From Cercozoa sp. M6MM (taxonomy: Eukaryota; Protista; Endomyxa: Ascetosporea): a stretch of 64,000 nucleotides of DNA. Below, piece after piece: positions 4,366 to 64,000 of this stretch (positions within the stretch are counted from its first letter, which is position 1; each line of letters starts with the position of its first letter). Under the pieces are notes generated by a model. It was given only the letters and a program-made list of their open reading frames with translations, was not told where the DNA came from and made no database searches. The position numbers were made by a program, and so were the translations under genes. Location: assembly GCA_040357565.1 (NCBI GenBank), contig JBDODJ010000002.1. One strand, written 5' to 3'.

Positions 4366-7300
4366 TCAGAAAAGGTTGGGTGGAGGGAGACCACCCAGGG
4401 GTGTGCGCGCGGAAGGTAAACCGCCGGGGACGTGACTCTGTTCGAATTGTTGTTGTTGCTGTTGGGGTTGTTGTTGTTGATGTTGCTGCTGCTGCTGGAG
4501 TTGCTGAAGTTGTAGCAGTTGCTGTCGTCGCTGCTGCTGCAACTGGACGTAACTCGCGTGCTGCTGCTGCAACTGCATCACGTGGTGATACTGTTGTGAC
4601 ATCATTCGCTACGTACACAAGGTATATACGGAGGCGGGGACCAAGGCTATTGGAAGAGGCCTACCTGTCGCTGCAAGAGCTGCTGCTTCTGTCGCTCCTG
4701 CTGCGTCTTGTGAAACATAAAAACTGCTTGCGGATTCATCTCCTTCATGCCGGTGGCGAAAGAGACGCCTCGCTCGCGGTAGACCGTGTGCACCCTCAGT
4801 TTGCTGCGGAAGCGTTCCACGCGCTGCGACAGCAGTTGGTGCTCAACCGCGCCGAGGTGCCGCTTGCATGACAGCGCCGTTGTCGCTACACATATTGGGG
4901 AACCAGAGTAAGGGGTAAGAGGGTAGAGGGCTGGCTGACAAGGGGAAGCAGTACCTACTCGCAGACAGCGCTGCATCCGAGCGAGCGCGAGTCGCATGTC
5001 GCCATGTCGGTGCAGTGCCCAGTAGAAGTGTACAGGACAGATGGCCGCACTCAATATTTGGTTCTAGGGAGGGTAGGGTAAGAGGGGTAGAGTAAGAGGA
5101 TAGACAAAAATGACAGGGCACCACGCAGGCGTAGACCTCGACAATCGGCATCTTTGGTGACATGAAGGCACACACAATGTCACTCTCACACGTGGCAACC
5201 TCAGTCGTCTGCGATGGTGTGCCAGTCGAGGACGGTGTCGCAGGTGATCGCGACTGATCATGTGACGGTGCCGCGATCAGTTTCAGCGTATCCTCAATCA
5301 CGCGCTCCAACAAACCGATGAGCGCCTGCAGGGGGAGTAAACTTTAAAGGTCATCGAGGGTGAAAAGACAAATACCTGCATGTCGGCTTCCTTCTGCGCG
5401 AACAACGGCAGCGCCCATAGTAGCGTCTCCTGTACACATCGGGATGAAGGGTGTAAAAGGGTTTAAAGCTGAAGGACCATCGCAATGGCGTGCATATCTG
5501 TCTTCTGGCACGTGCTTACAAGATCTACAGGAATAGTACAGGGTGTAAAACAGAAACAGGGAAGGGGTAAGAGGGGGGCAAGAAGTCAACACCGATAAGT
5601 CTCGCAGCCGTGCCGGTGGGCCGAAGAATACTGGCCAGCTCAAAAGCCGTACGCATCATTTCGGCCGCCTGAACACGCATGCGTTTGAGGCGTGTGGCAG
5701 CGTTATTATCAGTGGCCGTCGCAGTGAGAGCAGCAGCGTCTGTGGCGGTGGTGTCAATGACACCAGTGGCACCAGTGGAACTGTCAGAGACAGCTTCATC
5801 GGAGCGATCACAGCCCAAGAGGAAGTGCCGCTGTGCTGCGTACATGCGCACCGAAAGCACCACGGCCTGTCGTGCAAACTCGTCAGCGTCTCGCCACTAC
5901 AGACACGCCACGTGGTAACTCAGAAGTCAGTGACTCATAGCCGCCACTTGAAAGGGTCACATATTCAGGTAGCAGTACCCGCTGCAGACACATGGCCAGA
6001 GCGACGGCGTCGCGCACGGCGCGCAGCACGAGCGGCGTGACTACACCCTGCACGGCACACGGCAGGTAGCGCCGCACGTGCAAGTACGCTTCCTGCATAA
6101 GTGCTGACGGCGGCTCTTTCTGTGCCAGGGGTATCAAGGAGGCAAAATGGTAACACATGGAGAGTAGTACAGTATGCAAGCTGCAGAAGTAGGCGTAATC
6201 AAGTGCCAGTGACAGTCGCAGTGCGTGCACAGTAGCGCCCATGGCTGCGTGTGACGGCATCGGCTGCCGCAGTCGAGGCAAGAAATGTCGCTGCAGCTTC
6301 TGCACCAACTCGGCACTCGGACTCCACTGCCGGCCAGTTCGCCGACTCTCGCTGCACACACAGACAACATACCAAGGTATCTTTACGCCTATACCTCTGT
6401 TCGCACTTGAAGCATGAAGCTACGCTGCCATCGTCGCCGCCGTCAGCAGCAACAGACTCTCCAGCGTCATGGTTTCGCCGTGAAACGCCGTTCGCTCGTG
6501 CTCGCAGATCTTGTCAAAGTCTTGTGCTGCCAAAGCGCAGCAAGACCAAAGTGAACAAGGCAAAAAATCGTCGAAACTTTGACATGAACATCGAGTGAAA
6601 TTGCAAAAGCCGGTCGTACTTTGTTCGGCACGCCATGCGATTAGCAACGCTGGTCGCAAGTACCTCATTGCTTTTTTCTGTTGAAAAACAAAAGCAAAGC
6701 AATTCAAAACGTCAGTTCAAACAACTGAAGCGAATGAGAGAGAGAGCAAAAGCGTACGAGTCCGTCGACAACGTCGTGCACAACGCGAAGTTTGAAATCA
6801 TGAATCTGTTTTTTGCGCTCGACGCCGTTTTGCTGCAGCTGGAGCTGCTCGGTCTTGCAGCGTGAAATCTCTTCTTTGAGCAGCGTCGCCTGTTGCTGCC
6901 GCTCCTGCAGCGACGTTGCCACTGCCTGTTGTTGCTGTTGCTGTTGCTGCAGTGTCTTCAGTGCCTCTGACGCTCGCATTCCCTGCGAAAAGTGGTTAGT
7001 CAGACTAAAGCAGCAGACAAAACACAACAACTCAGAGCTTACTCGAGCGTTAACGGCGCTCAGTTTTTGCTGTACGTCGCGCAGCTCGAGTTGCATCTCT
7101 CGCAATCTGCACACATTTTGGTTGGCTTCGAAATCAAGCAAAGGCGAAAGGAAAAAAGCGCACGGTTCGCCACGCAAGATACGCAACCGATCGACTCGCT
7201 TGAGCGCAAAGGAAGCGAGTGCGCCAGAGCACACGACGAGCATCGTGACACAACGAAGCGAATCGAGCTGCACCAGTCGCTCGCGCATCAAGCGCTCAGT

Positions 7301-55339: not shown

Positions 55340-56760
55340 ATGGAGACCCGGGTGCTGCTGGCACCGGCCACTCTAGCGGTTGCCTTCGTTGGCTCAATCT
55401 ACTGTGCATTGCCTCCTTGCTTCAAGTACACCGAGTGGCGTGCACTATTTGTTTCCACTTGCTGCAGTAACCAAACTGGGCCGCTCGGTCAACCGTGACC
55501 ACCCAGCCGTTATCAGGCGTCGCTTGCTTGGCTGCACATGTGTCGCACTGCTTTCACCTATCGTCTTGTTCCTCGTTGCTGGAGGTATGGCCACGCGGGG
55601 GGCGGTTGGTCAAAGGTGCAGAGAAAAGTATCTTGTGAACACCGAAGTAGAGTACGACCCGCTGCGAGCGTTCGGTCTCACCAAGGACACTTGGCAGCAA
55701 CAACCGTTGTGGCTTCCCACTTGTCTCGTATTCGCTCTGTTTCTGGGTAACTTTAAACACATCCGTTGGCGTGCTTACGACTGCGTTGGCGTTTTGTTGG
55801 TGTGCAGGACCTCTGACAGAGTTTCTACTGTCGCTGACTGTGCCAACAACGCCGATGACTCTGTCCGCTGCCTCTTTGTCTGGCAAGCTGAGGCATGAGG
55901 TGAAAACTTGCGAAGTCGTTGCACTAGGCACTTCGTTTGTTTTCGATCGTGCACTGTTTTTTTTTTTGACAGGTAGATTTCTGGGATCTTCTGCGCTGGA
56001 AATTTCGTCAACAGGTGCTCCTGAACTGTTCCTGATTGACCGCACACTTGCATTTCGTCCCGTTAATCAGGCACATGACCTGCGCCAAACACCGTGGATC
56101 ACTGCTCGAAATTACTTGCTGGGACCGCTTTTGGAAGAAGTAGTGTTTCGACCACCCGCCGCGCTCATCCTGGCACACACCGGATCGCTCGCGACTGCCT
56201 TGCTTGGTATTTTCGTGCCTTCGCTGCGCTTGAACTGATTCTCTTGATGTGCTGTAGTGCCACCCTTCTTGTTCGGTCTTGCGCACACGCATCATGCGTT
56301 GATGCTGCTGCGGCATGGTTACTCCGTGCTGCAAGTGATGGTTGCTGCCCTAATGCAGGTACTATCACTCTCCGTGTCTTTGACCTGTATGAATGAATCA
56401 CCGGCCGTCTGAAATCACTTTGAAACTCTTTTCCAGGTGGCCTACACAACAGCATTTGGCGTGTTCGCGTCCTACGTCTACCTGTGCACGGGTTCGCTAG
56501 CTGGCGCTGTTCTGGCCCATGGAGGTATCCTGCACTCAGAGTATGGATACTCTGATAGCACATTTTAATGTGCAGTCTGCAACTACTTTGGCGTGCCTGC
56601 CATGTCCTTCTTGCAAACTACGTCGCCGTTGCGACATCTGCGGCGCCACATCTGGACTGCCTTTGGCGCAGGCATCGCTTTGTTTGCGCTCGGAGTGGCA
56701 CTGCTACTTCGCCCCGCACGTTTCCAGCGCACCTCCCTCATTTCGCAGCCGCTTGTTTAG
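55340..56760 (+). CDS. RCE1: CAAX prenyl protease 2 (RCE1)
   Basis: FVGSIY, NRDHPAVIRRRL, RNYLLGPLLEEVVFR (EExxxR), LFGLAHTHH (FxxxH), YTTAFG...TGSL..AVLAH|CNYFGVP (HxxxN). Confidence 0.92.
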
Positions 56761-57140
56761 TTCCTGATTTGAGTAAACCAAACGATCAGCACAGCTTTAC
56801 AATGCATGGGCATAACACAGAACAACTTCTTCTGTCATCATCATTTCTTCGTAAGCTCTGGCTCACGTTGAGCCGCAATCTTGGAAAAAATAACAATGAC
56901 CAGCAGCCAGCCAGAAGTGCTCGAATTTTACAAGCTGTGACATTGTTAGACAGAGCGTCGGATTCTACAGGGTACTTTCACATATCGACACTGCCTTTGA
57001 AATCTCAGTGATCGCGGTGAGAATTTTTTTCCAAATTGCAAGCCGCGTTCCTCGGCGTTTCTTACAGTTGTTGCGGTTTTCCCACCGTTTTGCTTGTGTT
57101 TGCGAATTGATATGCTTGGTCTGTGTAGGCAGAGGAGCCA

Positions 57141-60100
57141 ATGCGTGTCGTGGCACTTTGTCAGGTGCGGCAGTCAGTTGAGCTGTGCTTTTCTCATTTC
57201 TTGGCACGGATTTGCAATTGGACAGGACACGCGCGGTGGCCCGGCACAGCGAGTGCCGCTTGAGGTGCCTCCAGAGTGCACAGTGTCGTTTCTGAAGCGA
57301 TGTGCGTCGTTCCTGTGCCCATCCGCGCGGTACCTTTATCTGTGTGACCGAGTGTTTTAGCCAACCGGCTTACCTTCCTTTACCTTTCTTTACCTTTCTT
57401 TACTTCCTTCAACGCCTCCTCTCCCTCCCTCAACTCCCTTTCTCTTGCTCTTAGACAAGACGAAGAGCACTTGAAATTCAAGCCGCGTTTCGCTTTGTTC
57501 GGCGGGCGCTCGTTGCGCGACGAAGCTACGCTCGGCTCACTCGGACTCTCCAAGAACTGTGCTGTGGTAGTTTTTCAGGCGTTTGTCCCCCTCCGCTTTC
57601 CCTTCCCTTTCCCTATTCGCTTCCCTTCTCTTTACTTCCTTTTTCTTGTTTCTCTGTGCAGTCAATGCCCGGCACTTTTGTCGAAAGCAACGACGATTTC
57701 AGCGACATTGCGCATGCACGCAACATTGGCTTCTGTCACGTGTGTCCGCGCGGACAGGTAGAAAAATTTGATAGTCGAGAATATGAAGAGCGAAACGCCC
57801 AAACCAATAAACACACGTCTCGCAGGTGAATGAGCCGATCGACGCGGTCCTGGTTGAACCGGAACATACACCGCAGGACGAGGTGCTTTTGGTGCGGCTC
57901 GAGTCGGCGCAGCAGCTGCTCGACGGCGCCGTTGATGCCTACGTTACCTTCCGTGTCGAAGACACTTCCATCGTAGTGTTCCTTAAGCCTTAAAATTCAT
58001 ATTCCCTCCGTTGCACTTTCTCCCCGGCTGCAGCATTGGAAATCGCCGACGGCGCGGCGGGCGCAGTCGAGTGCCACGTGGAGCGACACGGTTTTCCTGG
58101 CGCACGTGATGTCGGAGCAGGGTAGCCTCCCGTTACGTTTTGCCTCCCTGTCATCCATCGACCTTTACTCCGATTTTCTGCTGTATAAGCAGAGGTGACA
58201 CTGCGTGTGGAGTGTTTCGACTCGCGCATGCTGCAATCGGACCGTCCACTGGGACACGCACGTGTCACACTTTCCAGTAACAGTGTGACTCGGGACGGCC
58301 GACGACTGCATTTCTCCCTGCCTCTGAACGACGCGCGCTGCAGTGACGCGCGCGTTATCTTCACTGTACCGCCCCTGTTGTACCTCTGTTACTCTGTTAC
58401 CCCCCGTTTGGTAGGTGCAACGCGCGCCAGTGCTCAACAAGGGCGTACGTGACGTGCTGGTGGCGCTGTCTTCCCGAACGGGTACTGTTGTCACCATGTT
58501 ACCTCATCCTGTTACCTCTCGCCCCGTAGGCCCGTTGAAGAAGGACACACTAAAACGGCGCGGGGTGACGCTCGGCGACTTTTGCAACGAGGCACGCGAT
58601 TTTAACTCGACGCAGACGGCGCTGTCGCTGCTGCAGTTGGACCGACTGTACCCCTAAACTTTTGCGCTAATTTGGGATCGTATTTCACTTGCGGTTAGCT
58701 GTGCATTGATTTTGTGCACGTGCGCAGGGAACCAGCTTCTCACGAGTGCGTGTCGCGCGTGCTGCGGGCGCAGGGTGTGCTGCACAACACGGCACCCTTG
58801 AGTCGCACGCTGCTGCTGGACAGTGCGATCGATGAGGATATGCTGCAGCACAACCTAGTGACGGTGCAAACACGTGATCAATCCGTCTCGTTAGTCACAT
58901 GTCTCACCGTATTGGATGCCGTGAAGCTGACGGTGCGACTCGCTCCGTCACTCGCCTTTGCGTTGCCCTATGATTGCGACACCCATGCCGATCTGCTGTA
59001 TGCCCCCATTTACTCCGTTTCATCTTCCTTATGCTGGCCCGCCCTATCTTGTGTCATCCTCTCTTTGTAACAGAGAGGTCGACGAGAGCACGTGCGTGAC
59101 ACCCAAGGTCGCTGGGCGACTGCGCGCACTTGTCGCGCGTTTCGTATTCTGCTCTCAATTTCTCTTAGATCGGTATTTGACATCCATACGGACAGAACGA
59201 AAGCGAGGAAACGACGACGCGAGCCTGCGCAAGTTGTCGGAGAACCCCGCGATTGTCAGATTTTGTGCTCACGTATGTGTTTCACCACCTTCAGCGTGTT
59301 TTCCCCTGTATCGTTGTTCCTTACACAGGAACAACTGCTGCCGAGAGTGCTACACGCAACAGGCATTCGCGAATCCGCAGGGCGTCCGCTCGGAGGTGGC
59401 CCTCGCGGTGCTGCACCCTCGCGAACGGGTGACGTTCTGCGAGGCGGCGGCGTCCGCGCAGGCGGAGACGCAGTGCGTGCGGTGTCCGCAGTGCCAATGT
59501 GCCTATTTTGCCGACCATGACGCTGCTGAGGTACTCGCTGACTTCCCCGCTTTAGCCGTGTAGGTTTCCAATTATCCTCCTTGTTGCAGATGCAGTGCGT
59601 GGCCGTCGATTGTGAGGCGACTTTTTGCGCGCAGTGTCTGGCGATGCCTTTCCACACTGGTACTCCTTTGCCCCACTATGCTTGTTTGACCTATTTTACC
59701 CCGCACCCTCCATGCAGGTGACACGTGCGAGCGTGCGACGGAACTGCGCAATGCGCGCAAGTAGTTTCTCCCTCTGTATCTACCTCAGTTCTACTTTACA
59801 CCCCCTCCCCGGTGTGACAGGTGCCGTTTCTGCAACGAGCCAGTGCTGCGTGAAAATGCATCGTCAGTGGGTGGTACATTTAGACAATATGGTGTCTGTG
59901 TTTGAACGATCTGATGAGTGACACGTGCGCAGACGTGTGCGCCGAGTGCGAGGACATCCTGCCTTTTGTGAGTGAGGTCGCGTGTCCTTCCTGCGGACAC
60001 CAGGGCCACTGCGCGCAGAGGGTTTGTCCCCTCACACCTTTTCCTACCCTCAATCCTCGATACCGCCATTGTTCCGTCCCAGGTGGTGACGAAAGAAGAC

Positions 60101-61314
60101 GCGCTGCACAAGGAGTGTAGACACCTGCCGGGTGACATTCTGCGCGACGACTCGGTTCCATGCCTCTCGTGCGAGGGTACCCTTTTTATTCTTTTCCCCC
60201 ATGTTGCCAACCCATGTCGCATGTAGATATGGGCGACTGCGTTGTCTGTGGCGATGAGCTGCGACTGCAGCCGTGTGTGCGGCTTGTGTCGGTAGACTTT
60301 CTATCCCTTTATAGTCACTTCCTTTGTTATGTTGCGCTGCTTCCAGGACGAGGGTAACTGCGGCCACATTGTGCACATTCGCTGCATTCGTCAGCGGCTC
60401 ACCAACGGATGGCCAGGTACCTCTCTTACCACTTTATCTCCCTGTTGCCCGTTACTTCTTTCCCCGTGCAGGTGCCCGTGTGACGTTCGGATTCGCGTCG
60501 TGTCCGCACTGTCGTTTGCCTCTGTCGCTTCAGTGTACGCACACTTGGCCAAACTGAACCCAACTGTACACACGCACACAGCATCCTTAACGATAAAATC
60601 TGTAGCCGGCAACGGAACCTTGTCGGATTTGCTGCGACCGATCTTTGACTTGAAGAACTCTGTCACCGAACGGTTTCGTTTTTTCTTGTTTGTTTGTTTA
60701 ACTTTCTCTGTGTTTCCGACTTTCTTGCTGTTTCCTTGTTTTCTTAAACGTGATTTTGTTGTTTAGTTTGTTGTTTGGTTATGTTGTACTTGTTGATGTT
60801 TTGCTGTGTTGGTATTCGCTGCTAACTGTGTGCTGTGTGCAGGAGCATCGCGCGTTGGCACGAAGACAACAAGGACAAAAAGAAGGCAGAGCGCGTTCGC
60901 GCGGACGAGGACAACAGCGACGGCGCCGACAGCAACGACGACCGTGGCGACGATGATGACAAAAGACCTCTGTCGGACCGCGAAATCAAAGAACTCGCAC
61001 TCGCCTCCTACGCATATTTCCAGTACGATGATTCTTGTTGTTTTGTTTTTTCTACCAAAAAATACGGAGTTTAAGTGCGTGAAATTCGAAAAAATAAACC
61101 TGTCTATGTGTGTGGCAGGTGCTACGAGTGCCATGAAGCGTATTTCGCCGGTGATGTGGAATGCGGACCTGCCGAGGAGGAGGGTACACTGTGCTTTAAA
61201 CTGAATCCTACCCTGATTAAACCTGCTTTTTGTTTGTTTTCGTTGTGGTGCATCTTGCTGCGTGTGTGTTGTATTGGGTGCTTTCGCGTTTGTTTTTAGT
61301 TTAGTCTGCTGTTG

Positions 61315-61389
<75 letters not shown>

Positions 61390-64000
61390 TGTATGCTTTG
61401 GAGGAACTTCTGTATGTCTGGCAGAGGTGGACCGCACGCTTTTGCTGTGCAAGCGATGCAAGAAAGTGGTACCTAGCTCCCTCTTCTTTTGACGTCTGCC
61501 TTATCGTGTTATAGGAGTCGATGGAGACGTGCGAGACGCATGGACCGGAATACGTGCAGTTCAAATGTCGCTACTGCTGCTCACTTAGTCGTACGCTCGT
61601 CTTTTCTCGTTTGCTGTTGTTGTTGTTCCGTTGCTGGATGACGCTGTATCGCATGATGTTGTATTGCATGATGTGTATCATGGTCGTATTGATTTGGTTT
61701 GTATGATGTTGATGTTTTATTGTGTGATGTTGTGTATCTTGCTGTCCCACTTTGTAGTGTCTGATGTTATGTTGTCTGGGTGTTATGTTGTATGATTTTG
61801 TATTGTCTGATGTTGGATTGTAATTGTATGATATTGTGTGATGGTGCATTGTATCGTGTTGTGCATGGTGTTGTATATGTTGCATTGTATGATATTGTGT
61901 TGTATGATGTTGCATTTTAATTGTATGATATTGTGCTGTGTGATGTTGTATTGTATCATGTTGCGTTGTATGATGTTTTATTGTGTGATGTATGTTGATG
62001 TTGTATTGTGTGTCGTTTTATTGTATGATGTTACATTGTATGATGTTACATTGTATGATGTTACATTGTATGATGATACATTGCATGATGTTACATTGCA
62101 TGATGTTACATTGCATGATGTTACATTGCATGATGTTACATTGCATGATGTTGCATTGCATGATGTTGCATTGCATGATGTTGCATTGCATGATGTTACA
62201 TTATGATGTTGCATTGCATGATGTTACATTGTATGATGTTGCATTGCATGATGTTACATTGTATGATGTTACATTGTATGATGTTACATTGTATGATGTT
62301 ACATNNNNNNNNNNATTGTATGATGTTACATTGTATGATGTTACATTGTATGATGTTACATGATGTTGCATTGCTTGATGTTGCATGATGTTGTATGATG
62401 TTGCATTTTATATATTGCCGTATTGCATGATGTTGCGTTGCATGATTGCATGATGTTGCATTTATATGATTTTACATTGTTTGATGTTTGATCGACGTGT
62501 GATTTTGTTTTGTCTTGTGTTCTGTGTGGCTTGTTGTTTTTGTTTGTTATGTTGGATTTGCTGAAGTCTTTTGATGCACCACAGGTTTTCATTGCTGGGG
62601 CTGCTGCCATTTCTGCAAGGAGTGGTACCTTCTGTTCTTGTTTTCGTCAGGTTGATAGGATGTTCCACGTGGCCAACTTCCATCAGAGTACGTGTGTGTG
62701 TGATGATAGCCACAAAACGAGTGTCTGGGAGACACTGAGTACGTACTCGACGGTACGCCTCATTGTTTGTTGTTTTGTTGTTGTTCTTTGTTCATTGTCG
62801 TACTGATGTTCCTTATTTTCATGTAGTTGTTGTATATCTTGTGTCCTCTTCTAATCGTGTTGTTTGATAGCAATTTTGTTGTTGCATATTGCTCTTGTTT
62901 TTTGTGTTGTTGTTGTAAATTTAATGTTATGTATTTATTGCATGCATTGTTTGTTGTTGGTTGTGTGTTGCATTTTATGTTATGTATATGTAGTGTTTCT
63001 TGTTGTTGTATCTTGTATGTTATGTATTCTATATGTATTGTTGTTGTGTTGTATTGTCTGTTATTATTGTTGTGTTGTATTGTCTGTTATTATTGTTGTG
63101 TTGTCTGTTTTTTAAATGCTGTTGTCTTGTATTGTATCGGATTGTACGATGTGTATTGTACGATATTGTACGATGTCTATTGTATTGTACGATGTATATT
63201 GTATTGTATGATGTATATTGTATTGTACGATGTATATTTTATTGTAGCGTACGGTGTATGTCTTATGTTGTTGTCTTGATAATTCTGGTGTTTCTTATGT
63301 ATAGGGCAAGAACAAGCGATGCATCGAAGAGTACTTTTTTAAAAATATACTTCTTTGACACATATTTCTTTTTCTGTTACTATCGACTGCCCCTGTTTAG
63401 ATATGAGCAGTGTGAGTCGCTGCGCGAGCAGATTCATGAAGTCGTGCGCCGTTTTTGCGAGCGACACGAGCTTCCCCGTGGAGTGGGTCTGAACCACGAA
63501 CTGCGCCCACAGCTCGATGAAGGTAGCACCATGTTCAATTCTCTTGCCTCTGTCATAACTTCCTCCTTGCTCTTTTGCTTTACCTATTCCCCTTTTCTAC
63601 TGGTAGAACTAAAGGTGCTGCGTTGTGACCCAAGTCGGTGCAAGCTTGGCATCCGCCATGCCCCGAACGGTTTCGAGTTCGGCATCGGCTGCGTGCTATG
63701 CAACGACGCCAAGGTGTGTTTTACCATCCTTTTTACCGCGTTGGGGCTTTGATCATTTTTCATCCGTTTACTCCTTTCTCATTTAGGAAAGTGATCGCAA
63801 CGAGGCTGCGCGCGCACAGGCTAAACTGCAGATTCTGTATTATTTCTGCTTCTTTGTTTTTTTAAAATGATGCTGACTTGCCCTTCCGGTGCAGCCGACG
63901 AATCGGGCAGGTTCGCAGTGCGATTGCGCGCGTTGAAAGTGATCCCTGGAATATCACGTTGGAGCAGTGTGTATGTTGCTCTTCACGAGACCGTTCTCAT
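57141..64000 (+). CDS. MYCBP2/PHR-type RING-Cys-relay (RCR) E3 ligase with N-terminal ubiquitin-like, C2 and IBR domains; continues beyond window
   Basis: Ubl (RVPLEVPPECTVSFLKR..LFGGRSLRDEATLGSLGL); C2 (VRLESAQQL.DGAVDAYV..LRVECFD..SDRPLGHA); IBR (RCPQC..QC..CEATFCAQC..PFHTGDTC); CRFC; RING (CVVC..CGHIVHIRCIRQRLTNGWPG|ARVTFGFASCPHC); tandem-Cys domain (YAYFQ|CYECHEAYFAGDVEC; CETHGPEYVQFKCRYCC; FHCWG..HFCKECH; CKLGIRHAPNGFEFGIGCVLC). Confidence 0.9.
61316..61386. repeat. (TG)n microsatellite, intronic
   Basis: Seen directly. Confidence 0.95.
62021..62400. repeat. 15-bp minisatellite (TTRCATTGYATGATG)n inside a ~1 kb intron, with degenerate flanks from ~61650 and an N gap
   Basis: About 20 tandem units; gives spurious YDVTL/CMMLH/NVTSC ORFs. 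Confidence 0.92.

What the first reader, a model, noticed from the sequence alone, without database searches (positions are those of the whole stretch)
57141..64000. Ubl-C2-IBR-RING-tandem-cysteine protein: an RBR/RCR hybrid E3 ligase with a membrane-binding module
Seen: spliced exons give the whole MYCBP2-type C-terminal machine (CRFC zinc region, RING with W.G.RVTFGF..CP.C, tandem-cysteine domain). Both relay cysteines are kept: GDVEC (equivalent of human C4520) and FHCWG (C4572), as is the downstream His in CKECH. Established: MYCBP2/PHR1 is the RCR ligase that esterifies ubiquitin onto hydroxyl (Thr) acceptors, and in animals it carries RCC1-like/PHR domains and ends just after the TC domain. 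Here the N-terminus is instead a Parkin-like Ubl, an Asp-containing C2 domain and a single IBR, and coding continues past the TC domain. Inference: a possibly Ca2+/membrane-recruited, Ubl-regulated non-lysine ubiquitination system with an architecture I do not recognise from characterised proteins.
Basis: partly seen in the sequence, partly recalled or inferred. Interest (0 to 1): 0.82.

Follow-up and report, generated by a model that had tools for sequence, protein, structure and literature searches.

The report
Divergent protist MYCBP2-type relay ubiquitin ligase
This is a real, roughly 33-exon gene of the marine amoeba Lemnamoeba sinaloensis that joins ubiquitin-like, C2 and IBR-type domains to the two-cysteine "relay" ubiquitin-ligase engine studied so far only in animal MYCBP2; it is an unusually divergent second copy of a protist family that sits in databases but that I found described in no paper.

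Summary
On the + strand from ATG 57141, 33 GT-AG exons in continuous phase encode a Ubl, a C2, an RRM-like region, a degenerate RING1 plus an IBR, a CRFC/CGH zinc region, a MYCBP2-type RING (W.GARVTFGF..CPHC) and a complete tandem-cysteine domain.

- **Gap:** 62305-62314 lies inside a 15-nt minisatellite in a 994-nt intron. No coding sequence is missing.
- **Catalytic residues:** both relay cysteines, the catalytic His and every invariant zinc ligand of RING and TC are kept. The triad Glu (human E4534) is Leu, and the invariant Thr (T4576) is Cys.
- **Insertion:** about 50-60 residues follow the catalytic His.
- **C-terminus:** coding very probably continues past the window into four discoidin-like domains.
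- **Novelty of the layout:** it is not unique. Ubl-C2-...-RING-TC proteins occur in Plasmodiophora, in metagenomes, and in a conserved paralogue on another contig of this genome (C49). That paralogue is probably what this scan reported earlier as s1-805946.
- **Spread:** RCR modules occur across eukaryotes (ciliates, Naegleria, Dictyostelium, Selaginella).

I found no paper on non-animal RCR ligases. Verdict: new variant of a known kind.

The parts
57141..57584 (+). Ubiquitin-like domain: exons E1 57141-57164, E2 57226-57329, E3 57455-57584
   Evidence: The ATG is the first in its ORF, just after an in-frame stop. Pfam ubiquitin gives E 0.012 on E3. tblastn with P0045 residues 45-76 gives E 1.5e-4 and covers 'CAVVVFQAF'. 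Orthologues also start directly with the Ubl.
57662..57757 (+). Linker exon E4, carrying one copy of the genome-wide palindrome TCCGCGCGGA (57745-57754)
   Evidence: Phase-0 exon between canonical splice sites. Palindrome located.
57826..58365 (+). C2 domain: exons E5 57826-57972, E6 58034-58121, E7 58193-58365
   Evidence: Pfam C2 gives E 0.01 on E7. E5, E6 and E7 each align in order to the C2 domains of P0038 and P0045, which themselves score Pfam C2 at 1e-23. Four of the five Ca-site Asp are kept; one is Arg (FDSRMLQSDRPLG).
58415..59143 (+). Helical linker and RRM-like region: exons E8 58415-58481, E9 58530-58647, E10 58728-58997, E11 59074-59143. There is no PH domain.
   Evidence: A profile of four orthologues gives a weak hit, 58729-58887 to positions 298-349 (E 0.36). 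That position lies just before the orthologues' RRM_1-like stretch (Pfam E 0.007-0.012). Only about 45 residues separate this region from the RING1-like CxxC, so there is no room for the PH domain that P0058 and P0077 carry. E10 alone has no detectable homologue among 1.84 billion proteins.
59196..59760 (+). Degenerate RING1-like finger (CASC...CCREC) and IBR: exons E12 59196-59272, E13 59329-59530, E14 59590-59659, E15 59718-59760
   Evidence: Segments 59144-59195 and 59273-59328 score as introns at -0.85 and -0.95 bits per codon (intron mean -0.88), which fixes the frame of E12. E14 hits the family profiles at E 9e-5 and 2e-4, at the position where Pfam finds an IBR in P0058, P0036, P0052 and P0060.
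59821..60176 (+). CRFC / CGH..C / PCLSC zinc region upstream of the RING: exons E16 59821-59873, E17 59933-60021, E18 60083-60176
   Evidence: E16 aligns to module positions 4-16 and E18 to 42-61. The same region is shared by animal MYCBP2 (BLASTP P0047 against P0038 starts at CRYC/CRFC). The alignment of E17 and E18 is ambiguous: either there is an insertion of about 20 residues, or two ligands are lost.
60227..60534 (+). MYCBP2-type RING: exons E19 60227-60291, E20 60347-60416, E21 60472-60534
   Evidence: Exon-wise hits to the family module: E20 at 5e-7, E21 at 1e-4, E19 collinear. All eight RING ligands are kept, as is the W.G.R.TFGF motif. E21 hits 5O6C residues 52-65. Genome-wide profile hit at E 3.4e-4.
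60606..61022 (+). Linker helix and helix-turn-helix with an acidic low-complexity insertion: exons E22 60606-60672, E23 60843-61022
   Evidence: Collinear weak alignments to module positions 136-152 and 177-192.
61119..61590 (+). First half of the tandem-cysteine domain: exons E24 61119-61183 (upstream relay Cys codon 61162-61164), E25 61425-61468 (Leu 61439-61441 in place of the triad Glu), E26 61515-61590
   Evidence: Module hits: E24 at 1.5e-5 and E26 at 1e-10. PDB hits. Column conservation. Codon coordinates.
61591..62584 (+). Intron of 994 nt holding a 15-nt minisatellite (61871-62361) and the assembly gap 62305-62314
   Evidence: TRF finds period 15, 33 copies. The same repeat flanks both sides of the gap. 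The E26/E27 junction leaves no family position unfilled.
62585..62752 (+). Esterification-site exons: E27 62585-62624 (catalytic Cys 62593-62595; Cys-Cys 62602-62607 in place of Thr-Thr) and E28 62710-62752 (catalytic His 62711-62713)
   Evidence: E27 aligns to module positions 257-268. C4572, H4577, F4578, C4579, C4582 and H4583 are kept, while T4576, which is 58/58 Thr in the family, is Cys.
63305..63522 (+). Lineage-specific insertion in the TC domain: exons E29 63305-63330 and E30 63401-63522
   Evidence: Leave-one-out codon statistics favour the model frames: E29 +5.2 against -3.4 and -5.3, E30 +24.9 against -45 and -1. Neither exon aligns to the family module. The phases are needed to link E28 to E31.
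63607..63713 (+). Last zinc knuckles of the TC domain: exon E31 (RC-DPSRC-KLGIRH-APNGFEFGIGCVLC)
   Evidence: Module hit at 1.7e-9. 5O6C residues 233-260. Genome-wide profile hit at E 2.1e-6.
63787..64000 (+). Start of a C-terminal extension: exons E32 63787-63836 and E33 63895-63970. It continues outside the window through four discoidin-like repeats to a stop near window-equivalent 69006-69008 (loci L003 and L035).
   Evidence: Segments 63714-63786 and 63837-63894 score as introns, about -1 bit per codon. The frames that are in phase with E31 are the best-scoring frames for E32, E33 and E34. E32 has a stop immediately upstream and no ATG. A dynamic-programming parse runs on into the repeats. 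One repeat exon hits a CBM32/F5-8-type-C module of 7NSN at E 7.5e-4, and the ESM Atlas gives the same lead.

Best explanation
**What it is.** A single intron-rich gene of Lemnamoeba sinaloensis (Cercozoa sp. M6MM). It encodes a fast-evolving paralogue of a protist family of RING-Cys-relay (RCR, MYCBP2-type) E3 ubiquitin ligases.

**Likely mechanism (inferred from MYCBP2, not shown here):**
1. The RING (exons E19-E21) binds an E2~ubiquitin.
2. Ubiquitin is passed as a thioester to the cysteine of GDVEC in a flexible loop.
3. It is relayed to the cysteine of FHCWG, next to the His of CKEC-H.
4. It is then discharged onto a substrate nucleophile.

**Other parts.** The N-terminal Ubl, the C2 (probably Ca2+-independent or weakly Ca2+-dependent), the RRM-like region and the degenerate RING1 plus IBR are regulatory or targeting modules shared with orthologous groups in other Rhizaria. 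The C-terminal extension with four discoidin-like domains most likely recruits substrates.

**Acceptor chemistry.** The triad Glu is Leu, the invariant Thr pair is Cys-Cys, and 50-60 residues are inserted after the catalytic His. The acceptor chemistry may therefore differ from the Thr esterification of MYCBP2.
For: **Gene model**
- 33 in-phase GT-AG exons.
- Intron sizes match the published genome statistics: mean 82 bp, 13 introns per gene, 99.5% GT/AG (PMC13746701).
- Codon statistics separate exons from introns.

**RCR membership**
- Four exons match 5O6C/6T7F in chain order.
- Exons align one by one, in order, to a 58-member module profile, with E down to 1e-10.
- An independent profile is significant genome-wide.
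- All invariant Cys and His of the RING and TC domains are retained, including C4520, C4572 and H4583.

**One gene from Ubl to TC**
- Single proteins with Ubl + C2 + RING + TC exist in Plasmodiophora, in Logan, ENA and JGI assemblies, and in this genome's C49 paralogue.

**Extension past the TC domain:**

**Mechanism:** as described for MYCBP2 in PMC9120709 and PMC9527308.
Against:
- E4534 is Leu, whereas 53 of 58 family members have an acidic residue there. T4576 is Cys, whereas 58 of 58 have Thr. The enzyme could be impaired.
- The middle region (E8-E11) has no significant homologue.
- The frame of E12 is fixed by splice logic, not by codon statistics.
- In about 50 relatives the TC domain ends the protein, with a tail of 3-26 residues. 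That makes the long extension unusual, although P0083 has a tail of about 160 residues.
Confidence: 0.78

Rival explanations
1. Two genes. The ligase ends 12 codons into the unspliced segment after exon E31 (stop at 63750-63752), as in almost all relatives. The four discoidin-like repeats then belong to a separate downstream gene.
For: In about 50 family members the TC domain is C-terminal, with a tail of 3-26 residues. The median intergenic distance in this genome is only 162 bp (PMC13746701). A dynamic-programming parse will always find some exon chain.
Against: - The segment 63714-63786 scores as an intron and has canonical sites in phase with E31.
- E32, E33 and E34 score best in exactly the in-phase frames: +5.6, +2.5 and +7.1 bits against the off-frames.
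- None of the three has a usable ATG before 'PLMGIG'.
- The alternative ATG frame at 63867 (63867-63869) scores -5.2.
- The paralogue P0083 tolerates about 160 residues after the TC domain.
Confidence: 0.2
2. A relay-competent but chemically altered, or catalytically weakened, RCR. Loss of the triad Glu and the Thr-to-Cys changes would abolish hydroxyl esterification. The protein would then act on another nucleophile, or mainly as a scaffold.
For: Leu stands in place of E4534, and Cys-Cys in place of T4575/T4576, the second of which is invariant in 58 relatives. An insertion of 50-60 residues follows the catalytic His. The Cys-His-Glu triad is stated in PMC9527308.
Against: All zinc ligands, both cysteines, His, F4578 and W/F4573 are conserved, which argues for selection on catalysis. 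Five relatives also lack an acidic residue at 4534.
Confidence: 0.3
3. A decaying pseudogene copy of the conserved C49 paralogue.
For: The sequence is very divergent. P0038 does not find it at E <= 0.01. It is equidistant from all family members. The PH domain is missing.
Against: There are no stops or frame breaks in 33 exons. Splice sites are intact. All invariant Cys and His of the RING and TC domains are retained. The exons show coding-type codon usage.
Confidence: 0.05
4. The Ubl/C2 part and the RING-TC part are separate neighbouring genes.
For: None beyond the lack of transcript data.
Against: The phase is continuous across introns of 46-125 nt, which leaves no room for a promoter. The same domain order occurs in single proteins of other species, including transcript-derived ones from EukProt and MMETSP.
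Confidence: 0.03

Closest known systems
MYCBP2 / PHR1 / Highwire / RPM-1 (animal RCR ligase; PDB 5O6C, 6T7F)
   Same: The CR[FY]C zinc region, the RING with W.GPRITFGF..CP.C, the linker and the tandem-cysteine domain are shared. Both relay cysteines, the catalytic His and all zinc ligands are kept. Animal and protist modules are about 42% identical over 331 residues.
   Different: - It has no RCC1-like, PHR, DOC or FBXO45-binding regions. It has Ubl, C2, an RRM-like region, RING1-like and IBR instead.
- The triad Glu is Leu and T4576 is Cys.
- There is a 50-60 residue insertion after the His.
- The TC domain is not C-terminal.
Rhizarian Ubl-C2-(RRM-like)-(PH)-IBR-RING-TC proteins: Plasmodiophora brassicae PBRA_005101 (P0045), Cercozoa sp. 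M6MM MHM6MM_002381 (P0083, the C49 paralogue), P0038, P0074, P0077, P0084
   Same: The domain order is the same, from an N-terminal Ubl that starts at Met1 through to the TC domain. RING1 is degenerate in both (CxxC...CxxC without C-x-H).
   Different: - This gene is far more divergent. Only the Ubl, IBR, RING and TC exons are detectable by sequence.
- It lacks the PH domain.
- It has changes in the acceptor pocket.
- It carries four discoidin-like domains after the TC domain.
RBR ligases with an N-terminal Ubl (Parkin, HOIL-1)
   Same: An N-terminal Ubl followed by RING1-like and IBR zinc fingers, and a thioester-forming catalytic module. HOIL-1 also makes ester bonds (PMC9527308).
   Different: There is no recognisable RING2/Rcat catalytic cysteine. 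Catalysis is assigned to a RING plus TC relay. RING1 lacks its second zinc site.

Membership tests
RCR (RING-Cys-relay) E3 ligases | RING domain with eight zinc ligands and the W.GPRITFGF..CP.C motif | tested here: met
   C4390, C4393, C4408, H4410, H4413, C4416, C4437 and C4440 are all kept, and the motif reads WPGARVTFGFASCPHC.
RCR (RING-Cys-relay) E3 ligases | Tandem-cysteine domain with its invariant zinc-binding Cys and His | tested here: met
   Every Cys or His column of the TC region that is conserved in at least 93% of 58 members is retained (C4582 and H4583). PDB hits are collinear.
RCR (RING-Cys-relay) E3 ligases | Upstream relay cysteine (human C4520) | tested here: met
   GDVEC, codon 61162-61164. 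It aligns to 5O6C index 143, which is residue 4520.
RCR (RING-Cys-relay) E3 ligases | Downstream catalytic cysteine (C4572) and His (H4583) | tested here: met
   FHCWG (62593-62595) and CKEC-H (62711-62713). The spacing to KCRYCC is identical to MYCBP2.
RCR (RING-Cys-relay) E3 ligases | Acidic residue of the Cys-His-Glu triad (E4534) | tested here: not met
   Leu (VDRTLLLC, codon 61439-61441). In the family the column is E 42, D 11, other 5 of 58.
RCR (RING-Cys-relay) E3 ligases | Invariant Thr next to the catalytic site (T4576, GTTHFC) | tested here: not met
   The motif reads WGCCHFC. T4576 is Thr in 58 of 58 relatives and Cys here.
RCR (RING-Cys-relay) E3 ligases | E2-to-Cys-to-Cys transthiolation and esterification activity | not testable with these tools
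   This needs biochemistry.
RBR ligases | Complete RING1 (C3HC4, two zinc sites) | tested here: not met
   Only CASC...CCREC is present, with no C-x-H pair. The same holds in P0038 and P0045. Some relatives, such as P0036, have a full RING1.
RBR ligases | IBR domain | tested here: met
   E13-E15 have the pattern C..C...C.4.C.4.C..C...H.4.C. E14 hits the family profile at 9e-5, at the position where Pfam finds an IBR in P0058, P0036, P0052 and P0060. On the exon alone Pfam gives only a weak RING hit.
RBR ligases | RING2/Rcat with a catalytic cysteine | tested here: not met
   The loop between the two Cys pairs of CRFC-x15-CAEC holds no cysteine. Pfam finds only one IBR-type stretch in relatives.
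C2 domain (Ca2+-dependent type) | C2 fold signature | tested here: met
   Pfam C2 gives E 0.01 on E7. E5-E7 align in order to orthologue C2 domains, which score Pfam at 1e-23.
C2 domain (Ca2+-dependent type) | Five Asp of the Ca2+ site | tested here: inconclusive
   Four of the five are kept. The second Asp of loop 3 is Arg, and loop 1 is five residues shorter.
Ubiquitin-like domain | Beta-grasp sequence signature at the N-terminus | tested here: met
   Pfam ubiquitin gives E 0.012, profile positions 42-67 of 72. tblastn from the P0045 Ubl gives E 1.5e-4.

The most novel reading that the evidence does not exclude
This could be an RCR ligase with a rewired acceptor site: Glu to Leu, Thr-Thr to Cys-Cys, and an extra cysteine-rich subdomain of 50-60 residues beside the catalytic His. 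Because the tandem-cysteine domain appears to be followed by four F5/8-type-C (carbohydrate- or lipid-binding type) domains, it might ubiquitinate a non-protein or otherwise non-canonical acceptor, such as a glycan or a lipid head group, rather than protein threonine.
Probability: 0.1. Interest if true: 0.85.

Novelty: new variant of a known kind. Interest (0 to 1): 0.55.

Why it matters
The RING-Cys-relay mechanism is treated in the literature as a peculiarity of one giant animal protein, MYCBP2.

- **Spread.** This locus and the relatives found with it show that the RCR engine is widespread in eukaryotes. It turns up in ciliates, Rhizaria, Naegleria, Dictyostelium, Anaeramoeba and Selaginella.
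- **Small versions.** It comes in small, tractable proteins of 600-1000 residues, often preceded by the RING1-IBR half of an RBR ligase.
- **A natural experiment.** This particular copy changes the acceptor pocket while keeping both relay cysteines. That makes it useful for asking what sets hydroxyl versus amine selectivity.
- **Position of the TC domain.** It would also test whether the TC domain must sit at the C-terminus.

Tried and rejected
- **Read-through ORF.** I first read 59075-59530 as one 152-aa ORF and searched with it. Nothing was found. Later analysis showed it holds two introns and a frame change.
- **Big search with E10.** The one large HMMER search, using exon E10 (89 aa), returned only a spurious repetitive protein. 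The middle region is lineage-specific or too divergent.
- **Pfam on single exons.** This gives only sub-threshold hits and nothing for the discoidin-like exons.
- **Paralogue of the N-terminal exons.** Own-genome searches found none. The C49 paralogue was found only through its orthologue P0038.
- **Closest relative.** Summed exon-wise scores show no nearest family member.
- **Alternative donors.** I rejected 57567 for E3, because it cuts the last Ubl strand. I rejected 61588 for E26, because it would delete one conserved position.
- **Alternative acceptor.** I rejected 62653 for E28, because it loses the invariant Cys-His.
- **RNA genes.** No RNA genes or tRNAs lie on either strand of 56500-64000. 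Minus-strand ORFs there are repeat-derived.
- **Joined protein.** No whole-protein Pfam scan, structure prediction or tree was made for this gene.

Full report
**Scope and method**

The gene is split into very short exons. I never joined exons into one protein, so no whole-protein domain scan, fold or tree exists for this gene. Human residue numbers come from my own knowledge of MYCBP2. They agree with the chain indices of 5O6C (263 residues, index = residue minus 4377). They also agree with an animal MYCBP2 fragment, P0047, whose last 121 residues run from the relay Cys to the C-terminus, as in human.

**Organism**

The window is G000:C2:186001-250000. A hit named 'MAG: hypothetical protein MHM6MM_002381 [Cercozoa sp. 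M6MM]' sits on a contig of 71,060 bases. That is exactly the length of contig C49 of this assembly.

M6MM has been described as Lemnamoeba sinaloensis (Apofilosa, Rhizaria). Its published genome has:
- 13 introns per gene on average;
- a mean intron length of 82 bp;
- 99.5% GT/AG introns;
- a median intergenic distance of 162 bp;
- many simple repeats (PMC13746701).

The paper does not mention ubiquitin ligases.

**Gene model**

From ATG 57141, which is the first ATG after an in-frame stop, I built 33 exons with continuous phase using only GT-AG introns.

Two places needed care.
- **E3 donor.** tblastn with the Plasmodiophora orthologue's Ubl covers 'LFGGRSLRDEATLGSLGLSKNCAVVVFQAF' (E 1.5e-4). 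E3 therefore ends at 57584, not 57566.
- **59074-59530.** This reads as one ORF, but the segments 59144-59195 and 59273-59328 score like introns. They give -0.85 and -0.95 bits per codon, against an intron mean of -0.88 and an exon mean of +0.89. They have GTA donors and good acceptors. Removing them (52 + 56 nt) keeps E11 and E13 in frame and forces E12 to read NESEETTTRACASCRRTPRLSDFVL. That puts a CxxC where the orthologues have one. Codon statistics alone do not choose this frame for E12, so this exon is the weakest part of the model.

Leave-one-out codon statistics support the frames of E13, E17, E18, E29 and E30.

No RNA genes lie on either strand. Minus-strand ORFs are repeat-derived.

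**The gap**

62305-62314 lies inside a 15-nt minisatellite of about 33 copies (61871-62361). The same unit is present on both sides of the gap. This array sits in the 994-nt intron between E26 (ends 61590) and E27 (starts 62585).

E26 aligns to family-model positions 233-255 and E27 to 257-268. The split codon (C|GT, Arg) supplies position 256. No coding sequence is missing, and only the intron length is uncertain.

**Is it a MYCBP2-type module?**

Yes.
- Four exons hit the solved RCR module in chain order.
- A metagenome scan seeded with the KCR[YF]CC exon gave ten RING-TC loci. Two of them carry intronless ORFs: L015:2947-4884 (646 aa) and L021:81-2141.
- With the L015 ORF I found 72 relatives. 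With Plasmodiophora P0045 I found 81.
- A profile of 58 modules aligns our exons E16 to E31 one by one, in order. The E-values (E20, E21, E24, E26, E31) are listed under parts.
- A separate profile, built from five metagenomic ORFs only, hits three of our exons genome-wide at 7e-7, 2e-6 and 3e-4.
- Animal MYCBP2 (P0047) and protist P0038 share 42% identity over 331 residues.

**Residues**

Every RING and TC column that is Cys or His in at least 93% of the 58 members is retained. This includes C4520 (GDVEC), C4572 (FHCWG), H4577, F4578, C4582 and H4583.

Three departures stand out.
- **E4534.** This is the Glu of the Cys-His-Glu triad (PMC9527308). It is acidic in 53 of 58 relatives and is Leu here.
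- **T4576.** It is Thr in 58 of 58 relatives and Cys here. T4575 is also Cys, giving WGCCHFC.
- **Insertion.** Exons E29-E30 add about 50-60 residues, with three Cys and two His, between the catalytic His and the last zinc knuckles.

The zinc region upstream of the RING aligns ambiguously. Either it has an insertion of about 20 residues, or it has lost two ligands.

**N-terminal half**

Ubl and C2 are supported by weak exon-level Pfam hits. They are also supported by collinear alignments to orthologues whose own Pfam scores are strong: ubiquitin 9e-18 and C2 1e-23.
- **C2.** It keeps four of the five Ca-site Asp. One is Arg.
- **E9-E10.** These resemble the orthologues' linker and RRM-like stretch only weakly.
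- **PH domain.** The PH domain of relatives (P0058, P0077) has no room here.
- **RING1.** It is degenerate here and in the Ubl-C2 subgroup. It is complete in the C2-RING1-IBR subgroup, for example P0036.
- **RING2.** I see no catalytic cysteine of the RING2 type.

**Paralogue and earlier scan findings**

P0038 finds its true orthologue on C49 (about 56.3-63.7 kb, minus strand). The pieces are 44-59% identical and cover Ubl, C2, linker, IBR, zinc region, RING and TC. NCBI annotates this gene as the 1550-aa P0083. This is most likely the gene that the scan already reported as s1-805946.

The gene studied here is a second, much more divergent copy.
- It is not found by P0038 at E <= 0.01.
- It is equidistant from all family members.

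The genome also has further RING-TC loci on C21 and C2050.

**Beyond the TC domain**

In about 50 relatives the protein ends 3-26 residues after GCxxC.

Here several observations point to continued coding.
- The 73 nt after E31 look like an intron.
- E32 starts right after an in-frame stop and has no ATG.
- E32, E33 and E34 score best in exactly the frames that continue E31.
- The alternative ATG frame scores like non-coding sequence.
- A simple dynamic-programming parse continues through four repeats.

The repeats have the form G.LY.LGT..W.NPA ... HY.LRHY.SWD.EALR.W.LEGS.DG ... FR.R.TG.NSN.H.L.LSG.E.FG. They run to a stop near window-equivalent 69006. One repeat exon matches a CBM32/F5-8-type-C module (7NSN, E 7.5e-4). 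The ESM Atlas gives the same lead.

P0083 shows that about 160 residues after the TC domain are tolerated. I put a single gene at about 0.8. An intron-retaining short isoform is possible.

**Novelty**

Three full-text searches found no paper on RCR ligases outside animals. Reviews describe MYCBP2 as conserved from C. elegans to mammals, and as the first example of the class.

The databases, however, already hold many such proteins. Some are auto-named 'RCR-type E3 ubiquitin transferase' or 'MYCBP2'. They come from Stentor, Stylonychia, Plasmodiophora, Spongospora, Naegleria, Dictyostelium, Balamuthia, Anaeramoeba, Selaginella and Closterium.

The family and the Ubl-C2 layout are therefore undescribed but not undiscovered. 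What is particular to this locus is:
- the altered acceptor site;
- the insertion;
- the missing PH domain;
- the probable discoidin-like tail.

Noticed in passing
window 57745-57754, and seven other sites (10668, 15470, 17901, 35323, 39953, 40734, 45714): The exact palindrome TCCGCGCGGA occurs 8 times in the window against 0.06 expected. One copy lies inside coding exon E4. This matches the genome-wide iterated palindrome already reported by this scan.
   Followed up: partly
window 61316-61386, 61871-62361 and 62905-63260: A (TG)35 microsatellite and related T/G-rich minisatellites of 15-45 nt inflate three introns around the catalytic-cysteine mini-exons to 241, 994 and 552 nt. The other 29 introns of the model are 46-170 nt.
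   Followed up: partly
G000:C49:56348-63700 (minus strand; L036): This is a conserved paralogue: Ubl-C2-RRM-like-PH-IBR-RING-TC. It is the orthologue of Plasmodiophora PBRA_005101 and is annotated in NCBI as MHM6MM_002381 (P0083, 1550 aa). It has an acidic tail of about 160 residues after the TC domain.
   Followed up: partly
G000:C21:120835-121281 (minus strand) and G000:C2050:501-605: The RING-TC profile finds further RING-linker matches here, which suggests at least one or two more RCR-type genes in this genome.
   Followed up: no
L015:2947-4884 and L021:81-2141 (metagenome contigs): These are intronless ORFs of 646 and 686 aa with the layout RING1-IBR-CRYC-CGHPC-RING-TC. In L015 the loop after CRYC holds a cysteine nine residues after the second Cys. 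From memory, that is the same spacing as the catalytic Cys of Parkin RING2. It hints that the RCR module may descend from an RBR ligase.
   Followed up: no
proteins P0085, P0094, P0098, P0117, P0113, P0120, P0129: RCR modules occur in Naegleria fowleri, three Dictyostelium species (with a C2 domain), Balamuthia, Anaeramoeba and the lycophyte Selaginella. The family therefore spans most eukaryotic supergroups.
   Followed up: no
window about 55770-56750, + strand: The upstream neighbour's exon translations (e.g. AFGVFASYVYLCTGSLAGAVLAHG) look like a CPBP/CAAX-type membrane protease. It ends about 400 nt before the ligase's ATG.
   Followed up: no
L003:7900-8020 (window-equivalent 64900-65020): An acidic and Ser/Asp-rich tandem expansion (DRSNDQTDRPDDQSDRSDDR...) sits inside the first discoidin-like repeat.
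   Followed up: no
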